A stretch of DNA of 63,572 nt, filler included, from Octopus bimaculoides (Eukaryota): NCBI RefSeq assembly GCF_001194135.2. It is 10 parts of 10 records of this genome, joined end to end, with 100 filler letters (N's around TTAATTAATTAA, not from the genome) between each part and the next. Parts side by side here need not be neighbours in the genome. Positions count along the whole stretch, not along the records: positions 27,550 to 38,546 come from NW_026337437.1; 9 more parts are not named here. One strand, given 5' to 3'. Shown piece by piece: positions 6,248 to 38,662 of the stretch. The number at the start of each line of letters is the position of its first letter. The first letter of the stretch is position 1. The notes under the pieces were generated by a model. It was given only the letters and a program-made list of their open reading frames with translations, had not been told where the DNA came from and did not search any database. The translations under genes were made by a program, and so were the position numbers.

Positions 6248-6444
6248 AAGGCGGCAAACCGGTGGAGTCGTTAGCACGCTGAGCAGAATGCTTAGCAGCA
6301 TTTTTTTCTTTACGTTCTGAGTTCAAATACCACTGAGGTCGACTTTACCGTTCATCCTTTCGGAGTCCATAAAACAGGGTTTGATGTAACTGACTTCTCC
6401 CTCCCCTCAATAATTCTGGCCCTGAACCAAATTTTGAAACCATT
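6248..6444 (+). mobile_element. tRNA-derived SINE, family M (Meta-domain-like core), diverged monomer
   Basis: Head AAGGCGGC...GTTAGCACG, B-box GAGTTCAAAT and core TTCATCCTTTCGG, shared with 9529, 22352, 24303 and 38663. Confidence 0.8.
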
Positions 6445-6527
6445 ATTACTTAATATAAAAACAAACACTAATATATATTCTGTAAATAATAATGATATTT
6501 TGTAAGCGGGAAACCCACCTTTTTCTG

Positions 6528-6812
6528 TATGTGTGAATAAGTACCAGATTTTAAAAAGCAAATACTGGGGTCGATTTGTTCGACTAAATTTCTTCGAGGC
6601 GGTACCCCAGCATGGCCGCAGTCTAATGACTGAAGCAAGTGAAGGATAAAGACATATACGACAGGCTTCCACACAGTTTTCATCAACCAAATTCGATAGC
6701 AAGGTATCAGTCGTCCTGGGGTAATAGCAGAAGACACTTATCCAAGATGGTGTGCAATGAGTGTGAACCCGAAACTGTATGATTGCAAAGCAGGCTTCTT
6801 AGCCTCACAGTT
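6528..6812. mobile_element. Two family C SINE fragments, tail to tail
   Basis: 6528-6640 matches the family C 3' part (GGGGTCGATTT...GGCGGTACCCCAGCATGGCCGCAGTC) on +. 6650-6812 matches the head/core part on -. Confidence 0.65.
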
Positions 6813-7404
6813 GTGATTGCGCCAATGTTTAGAAAGGACACATTAAATAATGTACCCTGACACATTCTATATCTTAAGAAAATGAGTAGATGGTCATTTT
6901 TGGAAAGCCTTTATGATTCTGATCAATCAGGACTCACACACAAATAATAAACAGAAAATCATTGCTGTGCTAAGATTCGAAATCTATAGAGTTTATACTA
7001 ATTATCTCCCTTACATCAGAAATAACTTGAACTTTCAGAGTGTGGCGGTATTGATTTATAAATGATTTTCATGCATTTCGTTTGTTTCCATAATGCTTGA
7101 TCACTTCAAACAAACTTTTGCAAGCATGGTGGGGGATAATTTTAGTTGTAAATGCTGGCAGACTTTTGGCTAATGAGAAATTAGGCACCTATTTGACGCT
7201 AAATTTTGAAACCGGTACCAAGTTGACCAGCATTACTTGTTCTGACCTAGGAGAAGTAAGATGTTATTATTGTTCAATGAAATTTTTTCTTATCATGTCT
7301 GTAGTAGATTTGTGACTATTCGGTGGTATAGAAGTATTTTTGACGTCTATTTTTAGCGATGTAGGTGCTCATGTAGTGCCCTTGTGTAGCGCCCTTGTGT
7401 ATAT

Positions 7405-9528: not shown

Positions 9529-9899
9529 GCCAGTTGATTAGATCGACCCCAGTACGCAACTAGTACTTAATTTATCGGCCCGAAAGGATGAAAGGCAAAG
9601 TCGATCTCGGCGGAATTTGGACTCAGAACGTAAAGACAGCATTTCGCCCGGCGTGATAACGTTTCTTATTTCTTTACTGCCCACAAGGGGCTACATACAG
9701 AGGGGACAAACAAGGACAGACAAACGGATTAAGTCGAGTATATCGATCCCAGTGCGTAACTGGTACTTATTTAATCGACCCCGAAAGGATGAAAGGTAAA
9801 GTCGACCTCGGCGGAATTTGAACTCAGAACGTAAGGACAGACGAAATACCGCTAAGCATTTCTCCCGGCGTGCTAACGTTTCTGCCAGCTCGCCGCCTT
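9529..9899 (-). mobile_element. Dimeric family M SINE
   Basis: Two successive head-plus-core units with a junction at 9665/9666. Same architecture as 24303-24706. Confidence 0.9.
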
Positions 9900-10199
9900 A
9901 GAATTTATTGAATATTGAGAATCTTCTGAACTTGGCACAGAATCGCTTCTGCTTTTCATTTTGTCAGTGCTGTATTTTTTGTTTTTTTGTAAACTCATCC
10001 AGTTATGTGTCGCCAATGCATGATAGTTCCTAACGACGTTGTGATGATGTCACATTTGCAGTCTAGGACCTCCATTAAAACCTCTGACTTAACACAATAG
10101 TGGTTGATTAAATAAAAATGTGTGAAGTCTGCGAGAGAATTTTTCACTATACTGCTGCAACTTTAGTTGTTTATGGCTCGGTCCATTGTTCAGTTACAA

Positions 10200-10760
10200 G
10201 AAGAAAAGGATAGCCAGCCAGTGGAACTGCGGAGCTTGTCCAATACACATTGGATCTGACAGCATGCATTGTGTTATGTTGTGCATTTGCACTTCCATCA
10301 ATTTTAGATAGTCGCATTCCAATGCACATAATCAACGAAGAGACAAACTGAGAGCAAGTTGCTTCTATCAGGCTTGTCTGCAAACGTTTATAATCGTCTT
10401 TGTATAAGTTAACAAGGCTATAAACTTTTTCATTGGATATGAATATAGCAATCGCATAGATACCCGGTTGCATTGAAGATCTTCATGTCAAACAAAAACA
10501 AATTGGATGGTAAAGGATTGTGGTATATGATGAAACAACACTGAACTTTATATAAGACGATCATCTCATTTGAGAGAAGCCAGACGACGAGTCAAATTTC
10601 ATGAGCATTTGCAAGACTTTGTAGTCAATGAGGTTGTTGGAAGTTGGTTGACAAGTAGTAGAGATCATTTTGGCAATTTTCGACGTAAGACCGTCATCCC
10701 TATTTTTACTCAAATCCTGTTCACAGCCCCAGTGCTGCGTTTCAACAGAAAGTTGTAATA
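10200..10760 (+). pseudogene. Highly decayed hAT-like transposase fragment
   Basis: ELRSLSNTHW (10224-10253) resembles the hAT LSxTRW motif, and RRRVKFHEHLQDFVV resembles the basic linker of hAT transposases. Many stops. Confidence 0.5.
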
Positions 10761-27449: not shown

Positions 27450-27859
27450 NNNNNNNNNNNNNNNNNNNNNNNNNNNNNNNNNNNNNNNNNNNNTTAATTA
27501 ATTAANNNNNNNNNNNNNNNNNNNNNNNNNNNNNNNNNNNNNNNNNNNNGTATGTATGTATGTATGTATGTATGTATATACACATATACACATATACATA
27601 CATACATACATACACGACTGCTATAAAGCAGGAAAGTATACTAGACCTTATATATTTAATACNNNNNNNNNNGTATATATACACGCACATATACATATAT
27701 AAATATATATATACACATGTACATAAATATATACATACATACATACATACAGATAGACAGACAGATAGAAAGACAGACAGAGAAGATATTAATCGGCACG
27801 AAGTTACACTATCATTATTATTTCGTCCGTAAGCAGTACAACTCCTTTGTATTCTAATT

Positions 27860-29200
27860 TGGTGGTCAGCCTAATGCTCTCCCCTCCCGCATCGATTCAC
27901 GTAACCACTCGAATGCTGAGCTTCTCTTGACAATACGTCGAGAGTGTGCTGCCGAAGTATGAGAGCTTATCGACAGCGTTCAAGGTTTCCCCTTCAACAG
28001 TGATAGTTGCTTCAAAAAAAAAAAAAAAAGAAAAAAGGACTTCTTCGAGGCAGGTTGGTGTATGACTTTTGTCTTCTGAGTACTAATTGTAAAGCCATAA
28101 GTTGCAGCCGGCAGTGGAAAATCAGTTCATGTTCTGTTGCATCTGAGGCTCTGTGTTGGCGTTGAGTGCGCACTCGTTTGCGAAGAAGAAGTCGCGTACT
28201 GAGTCCTCTTCCACCTTGTCCTTGCTGCCCAGGTCTTCACCGAGGCTCTGTTTCACATTTTGCCGTTCCAATTTGCTGATATTTGGCCGTTCGTTTGCCA
28301 GGCTTCCCCAGTGTTCGTCTCCTGAGCTGGATGAGCGAGTCGAGTTCTGCGAGGATGAGTCTGTGATTTGTCTAGCATTCTATGCCACATATGGCCTTTG
28401 TTACCCTAACAACCTCCCTGTCCCATCTTCTGACTGTGGCATAGTCAATTAGATGCCAATGTTTCCTGCGAGGATGCATTCAGACGTCTTTTTGCGGTTG
28501 GACAGACGAAATGCTGTGTTGGTAATCAGCAGATCATGCGCTGCGTAGGTCTTCAATAGTAGATGATCGTTGCTGTTGCTCTAACTCCGTTCCTCCTAAT
28601 GACTCTCTCTCATGCCTGGTAGTCTGCACCAGCTATGGTGTTGAAGTCGCCGAGGACGACGCGATTGTCCCATGAGAGCTTCCAATCTTCATAAAACCTA
28701 TTTATAGCCTCCCTTGAGTTAGTCATCGTAGGAGTGTAGGCACTGATGATGGTAGCATGGCACTTTCCTCTGAGGGAGAATCGCAGTCGGTCATTCAGTT
28801 CTTTGAGAAGGCTGGTTAACTTGCTGATCAGACTAGATCTGATGGTAAAACTCACTCCTGCATCGCGACGGTCATCGCTGTTGCGGCCACTCTAGAGGAA
28901 GATGTAACTGATTTTGACGTCAGTCACTAAACTTTGTCTGAAACTTGGTCTTGCTCAGTGTCCCAATGTGGATTTTGTGCTGCCGAGTTTTCTTGTGTTA
29001 AGTGCTGTCCGTCTCGCAGGTCTGTTTGCTTTGAAGCTGTCAATGAACATTCACGCATTCCATGTGCCAATGGAGAGCGATATCACCAATGTTTTCGTCT
29101 TGGTATTTCGACCGCATGTTTGGGAGCCCCGCCTGCCGCAGTATGCATACAGAAGAGAGCTAGGGATCAGATGAGTACCAAAGCGGACGAACTATACCGA
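27860..29200 (-). mobile_element. RTE-clade LINE with large internal deletions (APE plus RT fragments)
   Basis: SIGTWNA, RPARRTAL, SGRNSDDRRDAGVSFTIRS, IISAYTPT, VLGDFN (APE); then KVEEDSVRDFFFANECAL (degenerate FADD) and VDKLSYFGSTL (RT). Confidence 0.88.
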
Positions 29201-32200
29201 AAACCACCACATGTTCCACCCATCAGAGGTGCGCCCCCATTCACGCGCCTCCTTCCCACATACATACTTACAGACATACATACATACATGCATACATACA
29301 TACATAGACAGAGATAAGGAAGTACTTAGACAGATAGGCAGACAGATAAATAGATAGATTGACTGATNNNNNNNNNNNNNNNNNNNNNNNNNNNNNNNNN
29401 NNNNNNNNNNNNNNNNNNNNNNNNNNNNNNNNNNNNNNNNNNNNNNNNNNNNNNNNNNNNNNNNNNNNNNNNNNNNNNNNNNNNNNNNNNNNNNNNNNNN
29501 NNNNNNNNNNNNNNNNNNNNNNNNNNNNNNNNNNNNNNNNNNNNNNNNNNNNNNNNNNNNNNNNNNNNNNNNNNNNNNNNNNNNNNNNNNNNNNNNNNNN
29601 NNNNNNNNNNNNNNNNNNNNNNNNNNNNNNNNNNNNNNNNNNNNNNNNNNNNNNNNNNNNNNNNNNNNNNNNNNNNNNNNNNNNNNNNNNNNNNNNNNNN
29701 NNNNNNNNNNNNNNNNNNNNNNNNNNNNNNNNNNNNNNNNNNNNNNNNNNNNNNNNNNNNNNNNNNNNNNNNNNNNNNNNNNNNNNNNNNNNNNNNNNNN
29801 NNNNNNNNNNNNNNNNNNNNNNNNNNNNNNNNNNNNNNNNNNNNNNNNNNNNNNNNNNNNNNNNNNNNNNNNNNNNNNNNNNNNNNNNNNNNNNNNNNNN
29901 NNNNNNNNNNNNNNNNNNNNNNNNNNNNNNNNNNNNNNNNNNNNNNNNNNNNNNNNNNNNNNNNNNNNNNNNNNNNNNNNNNNNNNNNNNNNNNNNNNNN
30001 NNNNNTATAATACTCACTATGCTCCTGCAGTATATCGAACATCTAATGAAGGATGTTGATTTATTATAGAAGCAGCTTTTAATTGCTCAGACGCTTTGAG
30101 CAACAAACACTTTTTATTAAAACTAGCAGAAAGACCACCCTCCGGGCGCTTTTCTGCTAGACGCTTGATAATATTTTCACATTTGATTCCCAATTCTGTA
30201 GGCTTTGCAATATGAACAAACATTGTTAGAGACTGCCTGCATTGTGTGGCTACATTAGACAGGACAGCCTTTTCTTGAAAATTATCGAAACTGGCTTTCA
30301 TTACTAATCCTTTAACAGAATTCTTCCTAGTTTGAAAATTTTGTCGTCTGTACTCCTGCTGTAAATACTTGCTTTCGTCTCTCAGCAGGTGTTAGCGTAG
30401 GTGTTTCTGTTTTTCTCTTAGTGAAGTTGAGAAGGCATTCCATTTGATACTGATTATCAAGGCTTATAGCGTTCCAAACAGCCATACCAACAAAATCACT
30501 TCTTAAAGCGGTATATTAAAAATTTTCATTTTATCAAAAATATTCATTTAACAAACTCCGGAAACTGATATTATTATTGAAATTGTGCCCCGTATCATGA
30601 GCCCAAAAGTTATACACTTATTTTGTCTAATAGCATTCATTTATTCAATAAATATTTTTTTTTACATTACATGTATAGAATAAACTGTGAGTTTTGTAAA
30701 TAGCGAATTAAAATTTCAAATGAAAGCGTTGAAATGAATATACATTAAATTATCAGGAATGAAAATAGAGGCGAGAGAGAGAGAATGAGAGACTGTTGGA
30801 AATGAAAACGGTAAATTTCGCCCGCAACGAATCAATATTGTTTATTAAACATTAAAATCTACTTCACAGTGAGTGCAACGAATATTTAGATTTGTGAAAA
30901 ACTTGTAGTTCAAATATTCAATAAACTTCAGAAAACGAAATTACAGGAAATTTCTCGGAACATAAATTTGTAAAAATAATTCCAGACGGTCAAACTTTTA
31001 AGAATTGCTCTCTTTTAGTAACTGTTACTTACCTAACTAATAAGCAGCTTTCTCCATTAAGATATAGATACTCATCATGAATATACAATATATTGAATAT
31101 CAACTGAAGAATAAATGTTGCTTTATTACAAAAATAATTTTAAATGCTCGAATATTTTAATACCAAGGCTTATTTTTTTTTTTATCAAAATACTCACAAT
31201 GTGCACCTAATGAAGAATACATGTTACTTTATTATAGAAGTTATTTGAACAGATGTTCAAACATTTTGAAATCACTAAACTAGATTCTTATTAAAATACT
31301 CACCATGTCTCTTGATATATTCTGTTCAGGTACGCATGAGTTATATGTTAGGTAACAATTGTTTTCTGTTCATCATTTTGATTGTTATTTAACGTTATTG
31401 TTATTTCTTTTTTACTGTCAGAATTATTTAAGATAAATTATTCTGTAGAAATACATGGAGAGTGAGGAATGTTTCTGGTTGGGCTCCCCAGGTTTTCTGT
31501 ACGGGAATCGCCTGACTAAAAGTTCATACAGTTACAGTAACACTACCGCACACCTTGTAACTATGTTATGCGACCAACCAGCATGTTACATTGGGTGTTT
31601 AAGAACTTAAAGATGTATAAAACATCCCCATAAACACTGAAAGCAAAGTGAAGATGACTCTCATTTCAGTCTAGTTCCCAGCTCCTTCGGTACGCCCCCT
31701 GGCGCACACATTCCCTAGCCTCTAACCACTGCGAAAGGTTGAAAGAGACTGAAGGTATTTGAAACCCAAATCTCCGAGAAACGTTATCGATATTATGACG
31801 TCATAATCACAAAAGAGAAAAATTCCGATTTCTTTGGACAAGATGAAATACGCTTAAATCTTACACACACAAATACACACACACACACACACACACACGC
31901 GCGCGTACACACGCACATGAATACGTGCATAAATACACACATATAGACACAAATACACACAAATTCACGCAGATACACGCATACGCATATACACATGCAC
32001 AGACACATACAAACCCACAAACATACAATCACACACAAACATACATTCGCACGCACACACACCAATACACACATATACACACATGTATGTATGTATATAT
32101 GTATGCATGTATGTATGTCATTATTCAGTTTTCAGTTTTATATCAAAATTTCTCGCCAATAGAGAAAGAGCCGGTTTCTAACCTAGATCCAAGGCTCCTT

Positions 32201-32250
32201 CATTGGAATTTCATCATCAACAACAAGCTATTTTTGTATGTGTGTATTTA

Positions 32251-32286
<36 letters not shown>

Positions 32287-32699
32287 TGTATGTATTTATA
32301 TGTGCAGATTTGTATGTTTTACTTTATGTATGTATTCTCATGTACATAGTTGCATATCTAGACATTCTCATATATATTTAAATGTTAACAAAACAATTGC
32401 AGCGTGGAAGGTGTTTATAAGCCATTTAAGAAACACACTAAAACCGATAGATTCACTTCAACATTTAAATTTAATTTGCCAAAATATTTTCGTCTCTTTG
32501 AGACCGCTACCTATTCACTGACAAAATTCCGTGCTAGATTTTTACCGTTCCAGTGATGGATTGAATCTGTACACTTCGAATTAGCTTTCTCCTTTTTGGT
32601 TTTGAGGAGTCTATTTTCTCATGATTGGCATTTAGGCAGTGTGTTACATATCGCAGGACCGGACCACAATAATTACAGGTATGAACCTGAAATTGTAAT

Positions 32700-33552
32700 C
32701 TGGATAGAGTTACTGCAGATTTTCAAGACAAAATGTTATCTAGATACATTTTGACTCCATCTAAATCGTTAAATGTTTTTTTCTTACAATGAGTTCTGTA
32801 GAGACAAAAACAAGTCGAATGACTCAATATTAGAAGAATATGGTGGATGGGGTAAGTTCATGTAACTTTGCTCGGGTAGCCAAAACACATGTGGTCAGGC
32901 ATTGTCTTTTTGGCAATCTCCGGCTTCAATTCTTTGATTTTTTTTATTATTCAAATCAACCAGCTGACGACAGTACACATCAGAATTAATGGTCTCGTTT
33001 AGAGGGAAAAGCTCATAATAAATAATGCCTTTATGATCCCACCAAACACAAAGTATAGCTTTTCTTACGCAAACTCCAGGATCTTTTTCGCACTACGTTT
33101 TCGTACAAAATCCATTTTTCATCTCCAGTCACAAGTTGTTTAAAAAAAGGCATACTTTCATTCCATTTCAAAAGTAAATCACAAACGGAATAATGGTCCA
33201 TGCAATTCTTTTCTGAGAGTTTGTGAAGAACCTATACATTATAGCAAGAAATGTATCCTAGCTTTACTAAGTGTTCATCAGCCGTACTTTTAGAAACTTC
33301 TCTGCAAGTTCTCTAGTCATGATATTTGAGTGTTCTTCAATGTTGGGGTTCAAAACATCTTCATCTAATTTTGAAGGTATTCCAAACTAAACTCTCCAGC
33401 TTTAAATTTTGCAAACCACCTTCGAACAGCTGATTTGCCTAGCATCATCTCCATAAACTTCACAAATGTTTTTACAAGTCTTTGCAGCATTTTCTCCTTT
33501 TTTTTTTAAAGAAAAGCATTACATCGCAAATATGAAGATTCTGGTTATCCAT
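32700..33552 (-). mobile_element. Decayed mariner (DD34D-type) transposase
   Basis: Start codon at 33552; KGENAAKTCKNICEVYGDDA, LVTGDEKWILYEN (33112-33132 region), LCVWWDHK.IIYYEL and SLQNSL. Frameshifts and deletions. Confidence 0.9.
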
Positions 33553-33690
33553 TTCAAATGTCAATAGAGGGTAACCGGAATGAAAGACAAATCTATTTTT
33601 AGGAACAAAGAAGAGATGTACAATCACTTCAAGTAACGCCAAAGTTTTAATTGTGTTACGTTTCAGGTGTGTTCAATGAAGAGTCGAATA

Positions 33691-33755
<65 letters not shown>

Positions 33756-33802
33756 NNNNNNNNNNNNNNNNNNNNNNNNNNNNNNNNNNNNNNNNNNNNN
33801 NN

Positions 33803-33843
<41 letters not shown>

Positions 33844-34025
33844 TATTTATGCATGTATGTACAACTGGATATACACCATGCTTTAGCAGTTCCTGTGTTC
33901 TACATACACTCAGATCCCGGAGATATAGGAGATAATATTTTCTCAAGGTGCTGCATGGTGGGTTTGAACACGAAACCACGTCGGTTGCAAAAGGAACAGC
34001 TTAAACTCACAGCCATATTTACACT

Positions 34026-34112
<87 letters not shown>

Positions 34113-35055
34113 GATTGCATCCTTGGGCAAGGCACTTTACTTCTCATTGGTCAAATCTACTCAGCTGAAAATGAGTACCAGCTACGTGCTGGTGAAGCCC
34201 TTTTTCACAGTAGCTGTTAGCATCCTGAATGCGCCACTGGATCAAAGCATGACATGTCGAGACGGGGGTCTGTGACTCCATAAACCTTGTTTCGTCAGCC
34301 GTCAGAATTGATGCAGTTCTCTGTAACTTTAGCAAACATGAAACGTGACTTTGATCGTCTGCTGGGTTTTAGGTGCAAAGGTCGAGAAGGCGTGCTTGTC
34401 TGTTGGTGACTGGTGACTACAGGTGAACCTAAAGCAGTAGCGAAGACTTAGTAAACGAGAAAACTGTTTCTCTAGCTACCACGTTATATTTGATGATCAG
34501 TGGTTTTATAGTTGTTACAACTATAACGTGGGGGGAAGATCAGAAAGTGTACACAGCACACACAATACTTTGTGGTAAGTAGTTGTAGTAAAGACGAAAA
34601 TATATAATTAACTTTTAGACGAAATAATTAGCCATAAAATAAAAGCTTTATCAGGATCAGAATAAATTGCTTCACGTTATTCTGGCGCAATAACGACCCT
34701 ACCAGCTCGTTGCCTTTATATTTAATCGTAATATGAAAGCATTATCGGGACAGTGTAAAATATTTTATCACAAAATGATCAACTTAAATGTAGGTACAAA
34801 AGTCGTCTCCCTTGCACTGTAACAACACGAATAGGTTTCGTTATTAACGTAGGTAACATTCAAATAACTATAGAAATTGCTAATCGAAAGCAGATGAAGA
34901 TACACAAGGGAAGAATTGATATAAAATATATCGTGATTAATTATGCAATAATTTTCCACTAGTAAGAGAGAGACAGGTATTGGATATTAGATGACAGTAA
35001 GGTAAATTACACCTATAAATGAGATGACAAATAAATTAGTCAGAAAGTGTACTTA

Positions 35056-35543: not shown

Positions 35544-35638
35544 GCCTAGGTAACGCAGTAGGCAGCGCGTCAGTCTCACCATCAAACAACGTATTTGGAG
35601 GAATCTGAATGTTGTGAGTGTGATCCTCACCTGGGGCA
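35544..35638 (+). pseudogene. Intron-containing tRNA-Met pseudogene
   Basis: Collinear with 37722-37816 including a 22-nt intron (35581-35602). Anticodon changed to CAC, B-box GTGTGATCC, D-stem substitution. Confidence 0.85.
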
Positions 35639-35799: not shown

Positions 35800-36387
35800 C
35801 AATATATATATGTATCGCCTTCAAAGTCTTCTCCATTTGAAGCAATGCATCGGTCCAGGTGCGTTTTCCTCTGTTCGAAATAGTGCTGGAACTCTTGCGA
35901 AGTGATGCCTATTAACGCATCCATCGTTTTTTTTTTTTTTTTCATCACCTCTTATTTATCTGTAAATTCCGTAACACCAGCTCTCGTCACCGGTGATGAA
36001 AAAGGTCCGGATCTACTTCCAACTCTTCTTTCTGTTCACGATACGCATTCAGTCGTGACTGCTTTTGATCTTCCGTGAGCGAGCTAGGCACACATTTTGT
36101 TGCAATTCTTTTCATTCGTGATTCCTCGCTCAAAATTCGTTGGCAGGAGCTCCAGAACAGACCAGTCATATCAACAAGTTCGTCAATTATTCGGCGATGG
36201 AAGCACGCTGTTCTTTCGTTTCAGGCATCGCAAGAGTCAACGAAGAGGGGAGAAACACTGCAAAACAAAGTTGCACCTCGTTGGCAGTACGACTCCAATC
36301 GCCGACGCCGGTCGGTAGACTGATGACCGAGGGTCACATCAAGTGACTCTTAGCGGCAGAAGCCTGAACTACAACTATTCTTTTATT
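35800..36387 (-). mobile_element. Internally deleted mariner transposon relic
   Basis: CQRILSEESRMKRIATKCVP..LTEDQKQSR, ITGDESW, then a jump to the C-terminal DRCIASNGEDFEGD. Confidence 0.88.
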
Positions 36388-37070
36388 NNNNNNNNNNNNN
36401 NNNNNNNNNNNNNNNNNNNNNNNNNNNNNNNNNNNNNNNNNNNNNNNNNNNNNNNNNNNNNNNNNNNNNNNNNNNNNNNNNNNNNNNNNNNNNNNNNNNN
36501 NNNNNNNNNNNNNNNNNNNNNNNNNNNNNNNNNNNNNNNNNNNNNNNNNNNNNNNNNNNNNNNNNNNNNNNNNNNNNNNNNNNNNNNNNNNNNNNNNNNN
36601 NNNNNNNNNNNNNNNNNNNNNNNNNNNNNNNNNNNNNNNNNNNNNNNNNNNNNNNNNNNNNNNNNNNNNNNNNNNNNNNNNNNNNNNNNNNNNNNNNNNN
36701 NNNNNNNNNNNNNNNNNNNNNNNNNNNNNNNNNNNNNNNNNNNNNNNNNNNNNNNNNNNNNNNNNNNNNNNNNNNNNNNNNNNNNNNNNNNNNNNNNNNN
36801 NNNNNNNNNNNNNNNNNNNNNNNNNNNNNNNNNNNNNNNNNNNNNNNNNNNNNNNNNNNNNNNNNNNNNNNNNNNNNNNNNNNNNNNNNNNNNNNNNNNN
36901 NNNNNNNNNNNNNNNNNNNNNNNNNNNNNNNNNNATAGCTATTTGATTGTTATCTACCAGAAGATATGTTGCTAAGCATTTTATCCGGCGCACTCACGTT
37001 TCTGCCACCTCACCAAAAGTATCGGAATAAGAGCAAAATTGTTTATTTCACAATATGTTCATAGTGAATA

Positions 37071-37288: not shown

Positions 37289-37721
37289 ATGGTCAAAGTC
37301 AATATAGAAAGAAAGGTCCCATGACGCAAGATTTGTTTCAAAATACGAACTGAAATCAAGAGCCTTGCAAACCAAATGCAAAAATGTTCAGGGTGAATAT
37401 AGGAAGAAAGGTTATCTCCCCTGGACTGTGTTGCTACTTATAGCTTTCGTAATTAACGTCTAATGAAGTCGATAACAATAGAATAGCTATGGAAATTACC
37501 AATTCAAAGAAAATATAGATATAGTAAGTGCGTATTGCGATGAAATATATCGTGATATTTACGTAACAATTTTCTTACATGTAACGTTATATATATAATG
37601 TTATATATGTTGTAAATTAGATGACAGAAAGGTAAATTAAACAATACATGTTAGATAACTAAGTAATTAATTCGAAAGTAAGAGTAATTATATAGGTAAA
37701 TTTAAGAGCAGTTAATTACGT

Positions 37722-37816
37722 GCCTCGGTAGCGCAGTAGGCAGCGCGTCAGTCTCATAATCAAGTCAAATCTGTAGAGGAATCTGAAGGTCGTGAGTTCG
37801 ATCCTCACCTGGGGCA
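37722..37816 (+). tRNA. Elongator tRNA-Met(CAT) with canonical 22-nt intron (37759-37780)
   Basis: Spliced 73-mer GCCTCGGTAGCGCAGTAGGCAGCGCGTCAGTCTCATA|ATCTGAAGGTCGTGAGTTCGATCCTCACCTGGGGCA folds into a full cloverleaf and closely matches the animal tRNA-Met(e) sequence as I recall it. G1-C72 and a TTC T-loop indicate elongator, not initiator. The intron lies one base 3' of the anticodon. Confidence 0.93.
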
Positions 37817-37828
37817 CATCATTTAAAA

Positions 37829-37833
37829 TTTTT
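37829..37833 (+). terminator. RNA polymerase III terminator (T5)
   Basis: TTTTT 12 nt downstream of the tRNA discriminator base. Confidence 0.7.
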
Positions 37834-38257
37834 ATTTTGAATAAAGCTTATTTTCTTATGCCATAGAGAGTTCGTTTTATAAATGGAGATATTTACCAGA
37901 AATTCCCCGACCATATATATGAAAGACTGGGAGGAATTGTCAATTACTTGTACACTTCTTAGAGAAGAACGATTACAAAATACTCTTTGGCTGTGTGATT
38001 GTGATTGTACTCCCACAGGCTTGAGGACCGGCGCTGATTTGTTTAAGTCTTCTGTAACGTAGTTGTTTGACAAAAGAACCAACAAAATAGGTACCAAGAT
38101 TAAAAGTTGAGTATTAGGATCAATTTGTTCGGCAAAACTCTTCAAAACGGTGCTCCAGCATGGCTGCAGTCCGAAGACTATATAGATTAAATGAAAAGGT
38201 AATTAGTTAGAATGTCATCGTAGTCATATAGAGAAATTTAGGAGCAGCCTGTCGGTT

Positions 38258-38351
38258 ACCTCGGTACCTAGTAGGCGGTGCGTTAGTCTCATGATCAAGC
38301 AGTTTGTGTTGAGGAACCTGAAAATCTTGAGTTCGATCCTCAACCGGAGCA
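38258..38351 (+). pseudogene. Intron-containing tRNA-Met pseudogene
   Basis: Collinear with 37722-37816; CAT anticodon and 22-nt intron (38294-38315) retained, D-arm and acceptor stem disrupted. Confidence 0.85.
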
Positions 38352-38662
38352 CGTCTTTTAAAATTTTTGTTTGAGTATATTCATCTTCTGACGTTACACA
38401 AAGTTTTATACGGGAGGAATGATATTTATCAGAAATCTCCCAGCTATTTATATGAACTATTAGAAGAAATAGTCAACCCCCTAAGGAGTTCGTATAAGAG
38501 ACTGTTACAAGATACTCTATGATATATATATATATATATATATATANNNNNNNNNNNNNNNNNNNNNNNNNNNNNNNNNNNNNNNNNNNNTTAATTAATT
38601 AANNNNNNNNNNNNNNNNNNNNNNNNNNNNNNNNNNNNNNNNNNNNGTGTGTGTGTGTATGT

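What the first reader, a model, noticed from the sequence alone, without database searches (positions are those of the whole stretch)
37722..37833. Intron-containing elongator tRNA-Met in an animal genome
The gene looks functional: full cloverleaf, intact A/B boxes and T5 terminator. The intron has splicing hallmarks: position 37/38, C32 opposite the antepenultimate intron G (anticodon-intron pair), and CUC(32-34) pairing with intron GAG. To my knowledge, introns in human, fly and nematode tRNAs are limited to Tyr-GUA, Ile-UAU, Leu-CAA (plus Arg-UCU in vertebrates), whereas Met(e) introns typify plants and some fungi. This may be a lineage-specific intron gain or a retained ancestral state that makes elongator Met supply depend on tRNA splicing.
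Basis: partly seen in the sequence, partly recalled or inferred. Interest (0 to 1): 0.75.

Follow-up and report, generated by a model that had tools for sequence, protein, structure and literature searches.

The report
Intron-containing elongator tRNA-Met gene, animal
This is a real, intact-looking methionine tRNA gene interrupted by a standard 22-base tRNA intron, and the same kind of interrupted gene turns out to be common in corals, worms and other marine animals, so it is an ordinary member of an under-reported class rather than a one-off oddity.

Summary
Window 37722-37816 (+) is a tRNA (Rfam 51.9 bits, threshold 29) with anticodon CAT, elongator-type features and a 22-nt insert exactly between positions 37 and 38. 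Removing the insert gives a canonical 73-nt tRNA-Met. C32/U33/C34 can pair with intron G(-3)/A(-4)/G(-5). A and B boxes and a T5 run are present.

Two decayed paralogues lie nearby (35544-35638 and 38258-38351). Both carry a 22-nt insert with the same ends (ATCAA...GAGGA), so the intron predates the local duplications.

They share the same end signature (AU[C] start, G at -3). One class sits on stony-coral contigs and another on bilaterian contigs next to a Gfi-1 exon. A lineage-specific gain is therefore unlikely; a widespread, probably old, animal intron fits better.

I found no paper describing this, and a 2026 review suggests the intron was lost in animals. Mollusc origin could not be verified, and expression and splicing are untested. 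Interest is moderate to low: a new member of a known kind.

The parts
37722..37758 (+). Copy A, 5' exon (tRNA positions 1-37). Contains the A box TAGCGCAGTAGG at 37729-37740 and the anticodon CAT at 37755-37757.
   Evidence: Rfam tRNA 51.9 bits; sequence; spliced form called tRNA-Met(cat) by ARAGORN
37759..37780 (+). Copy A, 22-nt intron ATCAAGTCAAATCTGTAGAGGA between positions 37 and 38. G(-5)A(-4)G(-3) is complementary to C34-U33-C32.
   Evidence: Insertion in the Rfam alignment; constrained and suboptimal folds; its ends fit the consensus of 87 related introns
37781..37816 (+). Copy A, 3' exon (positions 38-73). Contains the B box GTTCGATCC at 37796-37804 and the discriminator A at 37816.
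37829..37838 (+). Pol III terminator-like T runs (TTTTT, A, TTTT), starting 13 nt after the discriminator base.
   Evidence: Sequence; 132 of 134 related genes also have a run of four or more T within 30 nt downstream
35544..35638 (+). Copy B, a decayed paralogue with a 22-nt insert ATCAAACAACGTATTTGGAGGA at the same site. Defects: anticodon CAT->CAC, A37->C, G10->A, B box TTCGA->TGTGA, no nearby T run.
   Evidence: Rfam 30.3 bits, found only in the E-value mode; alignments; ARAGORN finds nothing in the spliced form
38258..38351 (+). Copy C, a decayed paralogue with a 22-nt insert ATCAAGCAGTTTGTGTTGAGGA. Defects: 1-nt deletion in the D arm, acceptor-stem mismatches, G37. The T run is kept.
   Evidence: Repeat family D5; alignment; not reported by Rfam at E<=1; ARAGORN finds nothing in the spliced form
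37678..37721 (+). Upstream flank of copy A. It is shared with copies B and C (...AAATTTAAGAGCAG...), which shows the copies arose by DNA-level duplication rather than retroposition.
   Evidence: Alignments; the motif GCAGTTAAT is also found upstream of the gene in L122/L039

Best explanation
Copy A (37722-37816) is most likely a working nuclear gene for elongator tRNA-Met.

Inferred pathway (established knowledge of the tRNA pathway, not tested here):
- RNA polymerase III transcribes the gene from its internal A and B boxes and stops at the downstream T runs.
- The ends of the precursor are trimmed.
- The tRNA splicing endonuclease (TSEN) cuts after A37 and after the last intron base. It measures from the mature body. 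The C32:G(-3) anticodon-intron pair places the 3' site in a small bulge.
- An RtcB-type ligase joins the halves, and CCA is added.

Shown here:
- The gene sits in a small locally duplicated cluster with two decayed copies that carry the same-length intron.
- It belongs to a large class of intron-bearing Met(e) genes present in many marine animals, including at least stony corals and a bilaterian worm-like clade.

Inferred from that distribution: the intron is an inherited, probably old, animal feature that the usual model animals (vertebrates, flies, nematodes) lack. It is not a recent gain in one lineage.
For: Gene integrity:
- Full-length Rfam match at 51.9 bits.
- The spliced sequence is a canonical 73-nt tRNA-Met(cat).
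- The enforced cloverleaf costs only 0.1 kcal/mol relative to the MFE.
- A and B boxes and T5 are present.

Intron hallmarks:
- It lies exactly between positions 37 and 38.
- CUC(32-34) is complementary to GAG(-5..-3), with a 3-nt bulge at the 3' site in a fold 0.7 kcal/mol above the MFE.

Inheritance within the genome:
- Copies B and C have 22-nt inserts with invariant ends ATCAA...GAGGA and diverged centres (A vs B: 8 of 22 differ, all central).
- They also share flanks with copy A.

Breadth:
- 118 have 7/7 acceptor pairs and 132 have a downstream T run.
- One gene (L012) has exons identical to copy A, and 16 differ by 1 nt.
- Among 87 distinct introns, the first two bases are AU in 87/87, the third is C in 78/87, G(-3) in 85/87, R(-4) in 87/87 and G(-5) in 65/87, while the interior is variable.

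Taxa:
- L060 carries an ALK/LTK glycine-rich ORF whose named relatives are all Scleractinia or Anthozoa.
- L098 and L092 carry a Gfi-1/senseless zinc-finger exon whose named relatives are all animals.

Constraint: between L092 and L098 the flanks are unalignable, but the exons are 73/73 identical and the intron 15/17.

No intronless Met(e) sequence occurs in any fetched locus, and 12 loci hold 2-3 intron-bearing copies.
Against: - There are no expression or splicing data.
- Two of the three local copies are dead, so the cluster may be decaying.
- The anticodon-intron helix has only three Watson-Crick pairs (A35 faces A(-6)), and the canonical fold is not the MFE. The whole-precursor fold is no better than shuffles (z = -0.77).
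- The scan pattern demanded animal-type exon sequence plus an insert, so it cannot give the ratio of intron-bearing to intronless genes in any genome.
- Only two sequence classes were assigned to taxa by tool results. The rest are assumed to be animal from the near-human exon sequence, which I quoted from memory.
- Shared intron ends could partly reflect convergent splicing constraints on the same anticodon loop rather than common descent.
Confidence: 0.75

Rival explanations
1. Independent gains. The intron arose separately in the window's lineage and in corals, worms and the others. The shared ends would then be convergent, imposed by the same anticodon loop and the same endonuclease.
For: The G(-3), A(-4), G(-5) signature is what pairing with C32-U33-C34 requires, so it would recur in any Met(e) intron. 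Intron lengths (13-36 nt) and interiors differ completely between classes. From memory, plant Met(e) introns also end in GAGNN but start differently.
Against: The 5' end AU(C) is invariant in 87/87 (78/87 for C) distinct introns, and the known splicing rules do not require it. The trait occurs in both a cnidarian and a bilaterian class. Within classes it is inherited across species and across paralogues.
Confidence: 0.13
2. Copy A is an unexpressed or unspliceable pseudogene in a decaying tRNA-derived repeat cluster. The insert is junk, possibly a small duplication of AATCTG..AGG, rather than a processed intron.
For: Two of the three local copies are clearly dead. The 3' half of the intron (AAATCTGTAGAGGA) resembles the following exon (AATCTGAAGG). 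ARAGORN with intron search prefers an odd model with a 3-nt intron and a long extra arm. The precursor fold is not better than shuffles.
Against: Copy A has no defect in any conserved tRNA position, an intact B box and a terminator. Its exons are identical to a gene on an unrelated contig (L012) and 1 nt from 16 others. The insert has every conserved feature of 87 related introns. Upstream flanks are duplicated too, so the copies are not retroposed SINEs.
Confidence: 0.1
3. Assembly or joining artefact. The insert or the copies would be products of misassembly in a gap-rich draft.
For: The piece has four N gaps, including 36388-36934 between copies B and A.
Against: The three copies differ at many positions and are not collapsed or duplicated reads. 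The same architecture is seen in more than 120 independent contigs from about 65 sample series.
Confidence: 0.02

Closest known systems
Nuclear elongator tRNA-Met genes of land plants and green and red algae, which carry canonical introns (review PMC13578239)
   Same: Same tRNA family, same insertion site (37/38), short intron, and the same protein-enzyme splicing pathway is expected.
   Different: The exon sequence here is of the animal type. The animal introns start with an invariant AU(C). From memory, plant introns start differently. Homology between plant and animal Met(e) introns was not tested.
The intron-bearing tRNA families of model animals: Tyr-GUA, Ile-UAU, Leu-CAA, plus Arg-UCU in vertebrates (PMC12168002; PMC4536317)
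   Same: Canonical 37/38 position, anticodon-intron pairing, TSEN and RtcB processing expected, and multi-copy gene families in which all members tend to carry the intron.
   Different: A different isoacceptor. Met(e) is not on the list for human, fly or worm. No intron-dependent modification is known for Met(e).
Human intronless elongator tRNA-Met(CAT)
   Same: The spliced product differs at only 4 of 73 positions from the human sequence as I recall it (the human sequence is from memory). It has the same U31.U39 and the same anticodon loop CUCAUAA.
   Different: The human genes have no intron. Their C34 is 2'-O-methylated by box C/D RNPs on an intron-less substrate (Vitali and Kiss 2019, as cited).
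Intron-bearing Met(e) genes on metagenome contigs L001-L120 and L122, especially L012, L039/L122 and L070
   Same: Exons are identical (L012) or 1 nt different. The intron is at the same site with the ATC start and G at -3. L070 also starts ATCAAG. L122/L039 start ATCAA and share the upstream GCAGTTAAT motif.
   Different: Intron length (17-24 nt against 22) and interior sequence differ. None is the same species as the window.
Archaeal bulge-helix-bulge tRNA introns
   Same: Homologous endonuclease, a 37/38 site, and the 3' splice site in a 3-nt bulge.
   Different: There is no strict 3-4-3 BHB here. The central helix has 3 pairs followed by an A.A mismatch. Eukaryotic enzymes rely on the mature domain instead.

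Membership tests
Eukaryotic nuclear tRNA gene with a canonical protein-spliced intron | Sequence and structure match a tRNA covariance model above threshold | tested here: met
   RF00005 at 51.9 bits against a gathering score of 29, full-length
Eukaryotic nuclear tRNA gene with a canonical protein-spliced intron | A single insert located between positions 37 and 38, whose removal restores a 7-nt anticodon loop | tested here: met
   The spliced sequence is called a 73-nt tRNA-Met(cat). Because intron bases 1-3 equal exon bases 38-40, the junction could be drawn up to 3 nt further 3' with the same product.
Eukaryotic nuclear tRNA gene with a canonical protein-spliced intron | Anticodon-intron pair between position 32 and the intron base 3 nt before the 3' splice site | tested here: met
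   C32 and G(-3) are complementary. G(-3) is present in 85 of 87 related introns, whereas G at -2 occurs in 2 of 87.
Eukaryotic nuclear tRNA gene with a canonical protein-spliced intron | 3' splice site lies in a small bulge next to the extended anticodon helix | tested here: inconclusive
   Present in a suboptimal fold at -2.8 kcal/mol, against an MFE of -3.5 kcal/mol that lacks it
Eukaryotic nuclear tRNA gene with a canonical protein-spliced intron | Internal A and B box promoter and an oligo-T terminator | tested here: met
   Read from the sequence: TAGCGCAGTAGG, GTTCGATCC and TTTTT at 37829-37833
Eukaryotic nuclear tRNA gene with a canonical protein-spliced intron | The precursor is transcribed and the intron is removed in vivo | not testable with these tools
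   No RNA data are available
Elongator (not initiator) tRNA-Met | Lacks the eukaryotic initiator marks (A1:U72, three G:C pairs at 29-31:39-41, A54 and A60) | tested here: met
   G1:C72; anticodon stem U-A, C-G, A-U, G-C, U.U; T54 and C60 (cloverleaf). The list of initiator marks is from established knowledge.
tRNA-derived SINE or retroposed tRNA pseudogene | Copies begin at the tRNA 5' end and carry a tRNA-unrelated body and tail, with no shared upstream flank | tested here: not met
   About 45 nt upstream of the tRNA is shared among copies A, B and C, which indicates DNA-level duplication
Archaeal-type strict BHB intron | 3-nt bulge, 4-bp helix, 3-nt bulge | tested here: not met
   The central helix has 3 pairs and then A35 faces A(-6)
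   The best LINE relatives are unnamed (63-65% identity), and the named ones are vertebrate, echinoderm and amphioxus. Exact-protein look-ups found nothing. The only hint is a shared upstream motif with a host-derived contig in a SUP05 symbiont assembly.

The most novel reading that the evidence does not exclude
The Met(e) intron may be an ancestral animal intron, possibly shared with plants and so ancestral to eukaryotes, that vertebrates, insects and nematodes lost independently.

Its invariant 5' end (AUC) repeats tRNA positions 38-40. The precursor therefore still presents the uninterrupted string CUCAUAAUC, that is, the anticodon loop plus two stem bases. That may exist so that a precursor-stage step can act before splicing. 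Candidates are guide-RNA-directed 2'-O-methylation of C34, or t6A37 formation, which reads U36-A37-A38.

This would give a reason for keeping the intron and would contradict the recent suggestion that the Met(e) intron was lost in animals.
Probability: 0.2. Interest if true: 0.6.

Novelty: new member of a known kind. Interest (0 to 1): 0.33.

Why it matters
For this window it matters little: it is a normal tRNA gene cluster that tRNAscan-SE would annotate.

The broader pattern is worth a short note. The standard list of intron-bearing tRNAs in animals comes from a few model species. A 2026 review even proposes that the Met(e) intron was lost in animals.

The data here show it in many marine animals, with strongly conserved intron ends. 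In those animals all elongator Met decoding would depend on tRNA splicing. The conserved AUC start also offers a testable handle on why some tRNA introns are retained.

Tried and rejected
- **ARAGORN on the gene.** Default ARAGORN reported 'tRNA-???'. With intron search it proposed a 3-nt intron plus a long extra arm. I rejected this because the spliced 22-nt model gives a perfect class I Met tRNA and matches 134 relatives.
- **Whole-precursor MFE.** It is not better than shuffles (z = -0.77). This is not informative for a tRNA with a weakly structured intron.
- **Identifying the source organism.**
  - The ORFs in the piece gave only a sub-threshold chance match in Pfam.
  - The LINE remnant gave only unnamed best hits.
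  - Three exact-protein look-ups found nothing.
  - Offline BLAST of the piece against all fetched loci matched only the tRNA and the LINE.
- **Other collections.** The prokaryote genome collection gave one host-contaminant contig. The viral contigs gave none.
- **Synteny test in a named coral genome.** It failed because P0138 is not on record. An unnamed coral-like assembly (L123) carries a decayed intron-type copy near the orthologous gene family.
- **Literature.** Nine searches and nine papers read found no statement on Met(e) introns in non-model animals. The supplement of PMC12168002 is not held.
- **Sub-threshold Rfam microRNA hits** (mir-297, mir-466 and others) are microsatellite artefacts.

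Full report
**The feature**

Rfam's tRNA model matches window 37722-37816 on the plus strand at 51.9 bits (gathering score 29, E = 5e-09). The match covers the full model and has a 24-position insertion in the anticodon loop. Read directly from the sequence, the gene has three parts:
- a 37-nt 5' exon ending CTCATA (37722-37758)
- a 22-nt insert, ATCAAGTCAAATCTGTAGAGGA (37759-37780)
- a 36-nt 3' exon beginning ATCTGA (37781-37816)

Joining the exons gives a 73-nt sequence that ARAGORN calls tRNA-Met(cat) with a normal cloverleaf.

It is an elongator, not an initiator. It has G1:C72, no run of three G:C pairs in the anticodon stem, and T54 and C60 in the T loop. The list of initiator marks comes from established knowledge.

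The A box (37729-37740), the B box (37796-37804) and a TTTTT run at 37829-37833, followed by TTTT, are all present.

**Intron hallmarks**

The last five intron bases are GAGGA.

For the isolated anticodon arm plus intron, a fold with this helix and a 3-nt bulge around the 3' splice site lies at -2.8 kcal/mol. The MFE, at -3.5 kcal/mol, does not have it.

Forcing the full cloverleaf costs only 0.1 kcal/mol relative to the unconstrained MFE. The precursor as a whole folds no better than shuffled sequence (z = -0.77). That is unremarkable for a tRNA with a weakly structured intron.

ARAGORN's intron mode proposed a 3-nt intron with a long extra arm. I set this aside, because the 22-nt model yields a perfect class I tRNA and agrees with all relatives.

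**The gene is not alone in the piece**

A permissive Rfam run found a second tRNA-like match at 35544-35638 (30.3 bits). The repeat finder added a third copy near 38258-38351. Alignment shows that all three are Met(e)-type genes with a 22-nt insert at the same place.

| Copy | Coordinates | State | Main defects |
|---|---|---|---|
| A | 37722-37816 | intact | none |
| B | 35544-35638 | decayed | anticodon CAC, C37, A10, broken B box |
| C | 38258-38351 | decayed | 1-nt D-arm deletion, acceptor-stem mismatches, G37 |

ARAGORN finds no tRNA in the spliced forms of B or C.

The three inserts share invariant ends (ATCAA...GAGGA), while the central 12 nt have diverged. A and B differ at 8 of 22 positions, all of them central.

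About 45 nt upstream and about 150 nt downstream are also similar among the copies. The copies therefore arose by local DNA duplication, not retroposition, and the intron predates those duplications.

**Relatives elsewhere**

I scanned the metagenome contigs once. The pattern required animal-type Met(e) exon sequence on both sides of a 6-36-nt gap after CTCATA.

These contigs carry 134 genes:
- 118 have seven acceptor pairs.
- 132 have a run of four or more T just downstream.
- One (L012) has exons identical to copy A, and 16 differ by a single base.
- Intron lengths range from 13 to 36 nt.

Among 87 distinct introns from intact, non-redundant genes:

| Intron position | Base | Frequency |
|---|---|---|
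| 1 | A | 87/87 |
| 2 | U | 87/87 |
| 3 | C | 78/87 |
| -3 | G | 85/87 |
| -4 | A or G | 87/87 |
| -5 | G | 65/87 |

The interior is A-rich and variable. The window's intron fits all of these positions.

No intronless Met(e) sequence occurs in any fetched locus, and twelve loci carry two or three intron-bearing copies. The loci were selected for an intron-bearing gene. Only the additional copies are therefore informative about how common the intron is within a genome.

**Who these relatives are**

Two sequence classes could be placed by tool results.
- **13-14-nt intron class** (exon ends GCCTCGT/ACGGGGC). It includes L060. Its neighbouring glycine-rich ALK/LTK-type ORF has named relatives only in stony corals and sea anemones: Oculina, Stylophora, Montipora, Nematostella.
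- **16-23-nt intron class** (exon ends GCCTAGG/CCTGGGC). It includes L092 and L098. Each has the tRNA gene 2-3 kb upstream of a Gfi-1/senseless zinc-finger exon whose named relatives are all animals. From memory, the sample series are gutless-worm metagenomes. I could not verify this.

Between L092 and L098 the flanks cannot be aligned, yet the exons are identical and the intron is 15/17 identical. The intron therefore evolves much more slowly than the surrounding DNA, through selection or concerted evolution.

One further hit lies on a low-coverage 1-kb contig in a 'SUP05 cluster bacterium' assembly (L122). It is evidently host DNA. It shares an ATCAA intron start and an upstream GCAGTTAAT motif with copy A.

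**The source organism**

The piece is a gap-rich, AT-rich, repeat-rich stretch with four N runs. It holds:
- a frameshifted LINE endonuclease and reverse-transcriptase remnant at about 27940-29147 (minus strand). Its named relatives are animal 'craniofacial development protein 2-like' proteins.
- a mariner transposase remnant at 32775-33507 (minus strand; Pfam PF01359, E = 1.8e-15).
- several microsatellites.

This supports an animal genome. Nothing I could run assigns it to Mollusca.

**Mechanism**

Shown:
- gene integrity
- the position of the intron
- complementarity between the anticodon loop and the 3' end of the intron
- inheritance of the intron across paralogues and across species

Inferred from the established eukaryotic pathway:
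- Pol III transcribes from the internal promoter.
- The precursor ends are processed.
- TSEN cleaves at both intron ends, with the 32:(-3) pair positioning the 3' cut.
- An RtcB-type ligase joins the halves, and CCA is added.

If all Met(e) genes of the animal carry the intron, as all three copies here do, decoding of internal AUG codons depends on tRNA splicing.

**Comparison with what is known**

Canonical tRNA introns are a known kind. Met(e) introns are well documented in plants and algae. A survey of GtRNAdb notes kingdom-specific patterns for tM(CAU).

For model animals, the four spliced human tRNAs and the conserved Tyr, Ile-UAU, Leu-CAA and Arg-UCU introns are reported.

I found no paper in the searchable library that describes Met(e) introns in non-model animals. 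[quoted passage not shown] The sequence data here show it was not lost in many animals.

This gene is therefore a new, ordinary member of a known kind. The class as a whole appears under-reported rather than unknown to databases.

**An unexplained detail**

The invariant AU(C) at the intron start equals tRNA positions 38-40. The precursor therefore keeps the contiguous string CUCAUAAUC.

In the coral class the whole first seven intron bases (ATCTGAA) duplicate the start of the 3' exon. Rfam accordingly aligns a decayed coral copy with the intron start acting as the anticodon stem.

The known splicing rules do not require this. It may record the intron's origin by duplication. It may instead preserve the anticodon-loop context for a step that acts on the precursor. 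This is speculation and is scored separately as the novel case.

**Verdict**

- Novelty is low for this locus.
- There is modest interest in the wider pattern.

Noticed in passing
L001-L120 (intron-bearing Met(e) genes); window 37759-37761: The first intron bases are A, U in 87/87 and C in 78/87 distinct introns. They equal tRNA positions 38-40, so the splice junction can formally slide by 3 nt and the precursor keeps CUCAUAAUC contiguous. The known tRNA splicing rules do not explain this.
   Followed up: partly
L011, L030, L042, L049, L060, L069, L113, L116 and others (coral-type contigs): The 13-nt coral-class intron ATCTGAATTAGAA begins with a 7-nt copy of the start of the 3' exon (ATCTGAA). 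The precursor could therefore form a mature-like anticodon arm using intron bases. Rfam aligns a decayed copy in L123 (11535-11622) in exactly that way.
   Followed up: partly
window 35544-35638 and 38258-38351: Two decayed paralogues of the Met(e) gene carry the same-length intron and shared flanks (spacing 2178 and 536 bp, A-B and C-A start to start). This is a small locally duplicated tRNA gene cluster. More copies could be hidden in the N gap at 36388-36934.
   Followed up: yes
window 27940-29147 (-): A frameshifted LINE remnant (AP endonuclease plus the start of the reverse transcriptase). It is about 70% identical at the DNA level to an element on an unnamed 465-kb ENA contig (L121). The named protein relatives are animal 'craniofacial development protein 2-like'.
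   Followed up: partly
window 32775-33507 (-) and 35920-36124 (-): A mariner-type transposase remnant with stops and frameshifts (Pfam Transposase_1, E = 1.8e-15). A second short fragment looks mariner-like by eye but has no Pfam hit.
   Followed up: partly
window 27550-27740, 31850-32310, 33690-33860, 34026-34117, 38520-38546: Microsatellites: (TATG)n, (CA)n, (TCTA/TCTG)n and (TA)n. They produce sub-threshold Rfam hits to mir-297, mir-466 and similar families, which are artefacts. N gaps lie at 27663-27672, 29368-30005, 33756-33802 and 36388-36934.
   Followed up: yes
L092 6793-6882 with 9615-10200; L098 4184-4273 with 6361-6870: In two related worm-type contigs, the intron-bearing Met(e) gene lies 2-3 kb upstream of the same Gfi-1/senseless zinc-finger exon. 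The flanks are unalignable, but the exons are identical and the intron is 15/17 identical.
   Followed up: partly
L122 (FXLX01000321.1) 788-880: A 1-kb, 0.55x-coverage contig in an 'uncultured SUP05 cluster bacterium isolate CRYPA' assembly carries a eukaryotic intron-bearing tRNA-Met gene identical to the one in L039. It is probably host DNA contaminating a symbiont genome bin.
   Followed up: partly
L093 (two copies about 2.9 kb apart) and L111 (two copies about 5.4 kb apart): Intron-bearing Met(e) genes sit in tandem repeats with identical flanking ORFs or terminators. This suggests tandem arrays in those unidentified genomes.
   Followed up: no
L057 2153-6850: An AT-rich (31% GC) contig with an intron-bearing Met(e) gene also carries an uninterrupted 1565-codon PRP8 reading frame and an ankyrin-patatin gene. 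This points to a compact, intron-poor eukaryotic genome of unknown identity.
   Followed up: no
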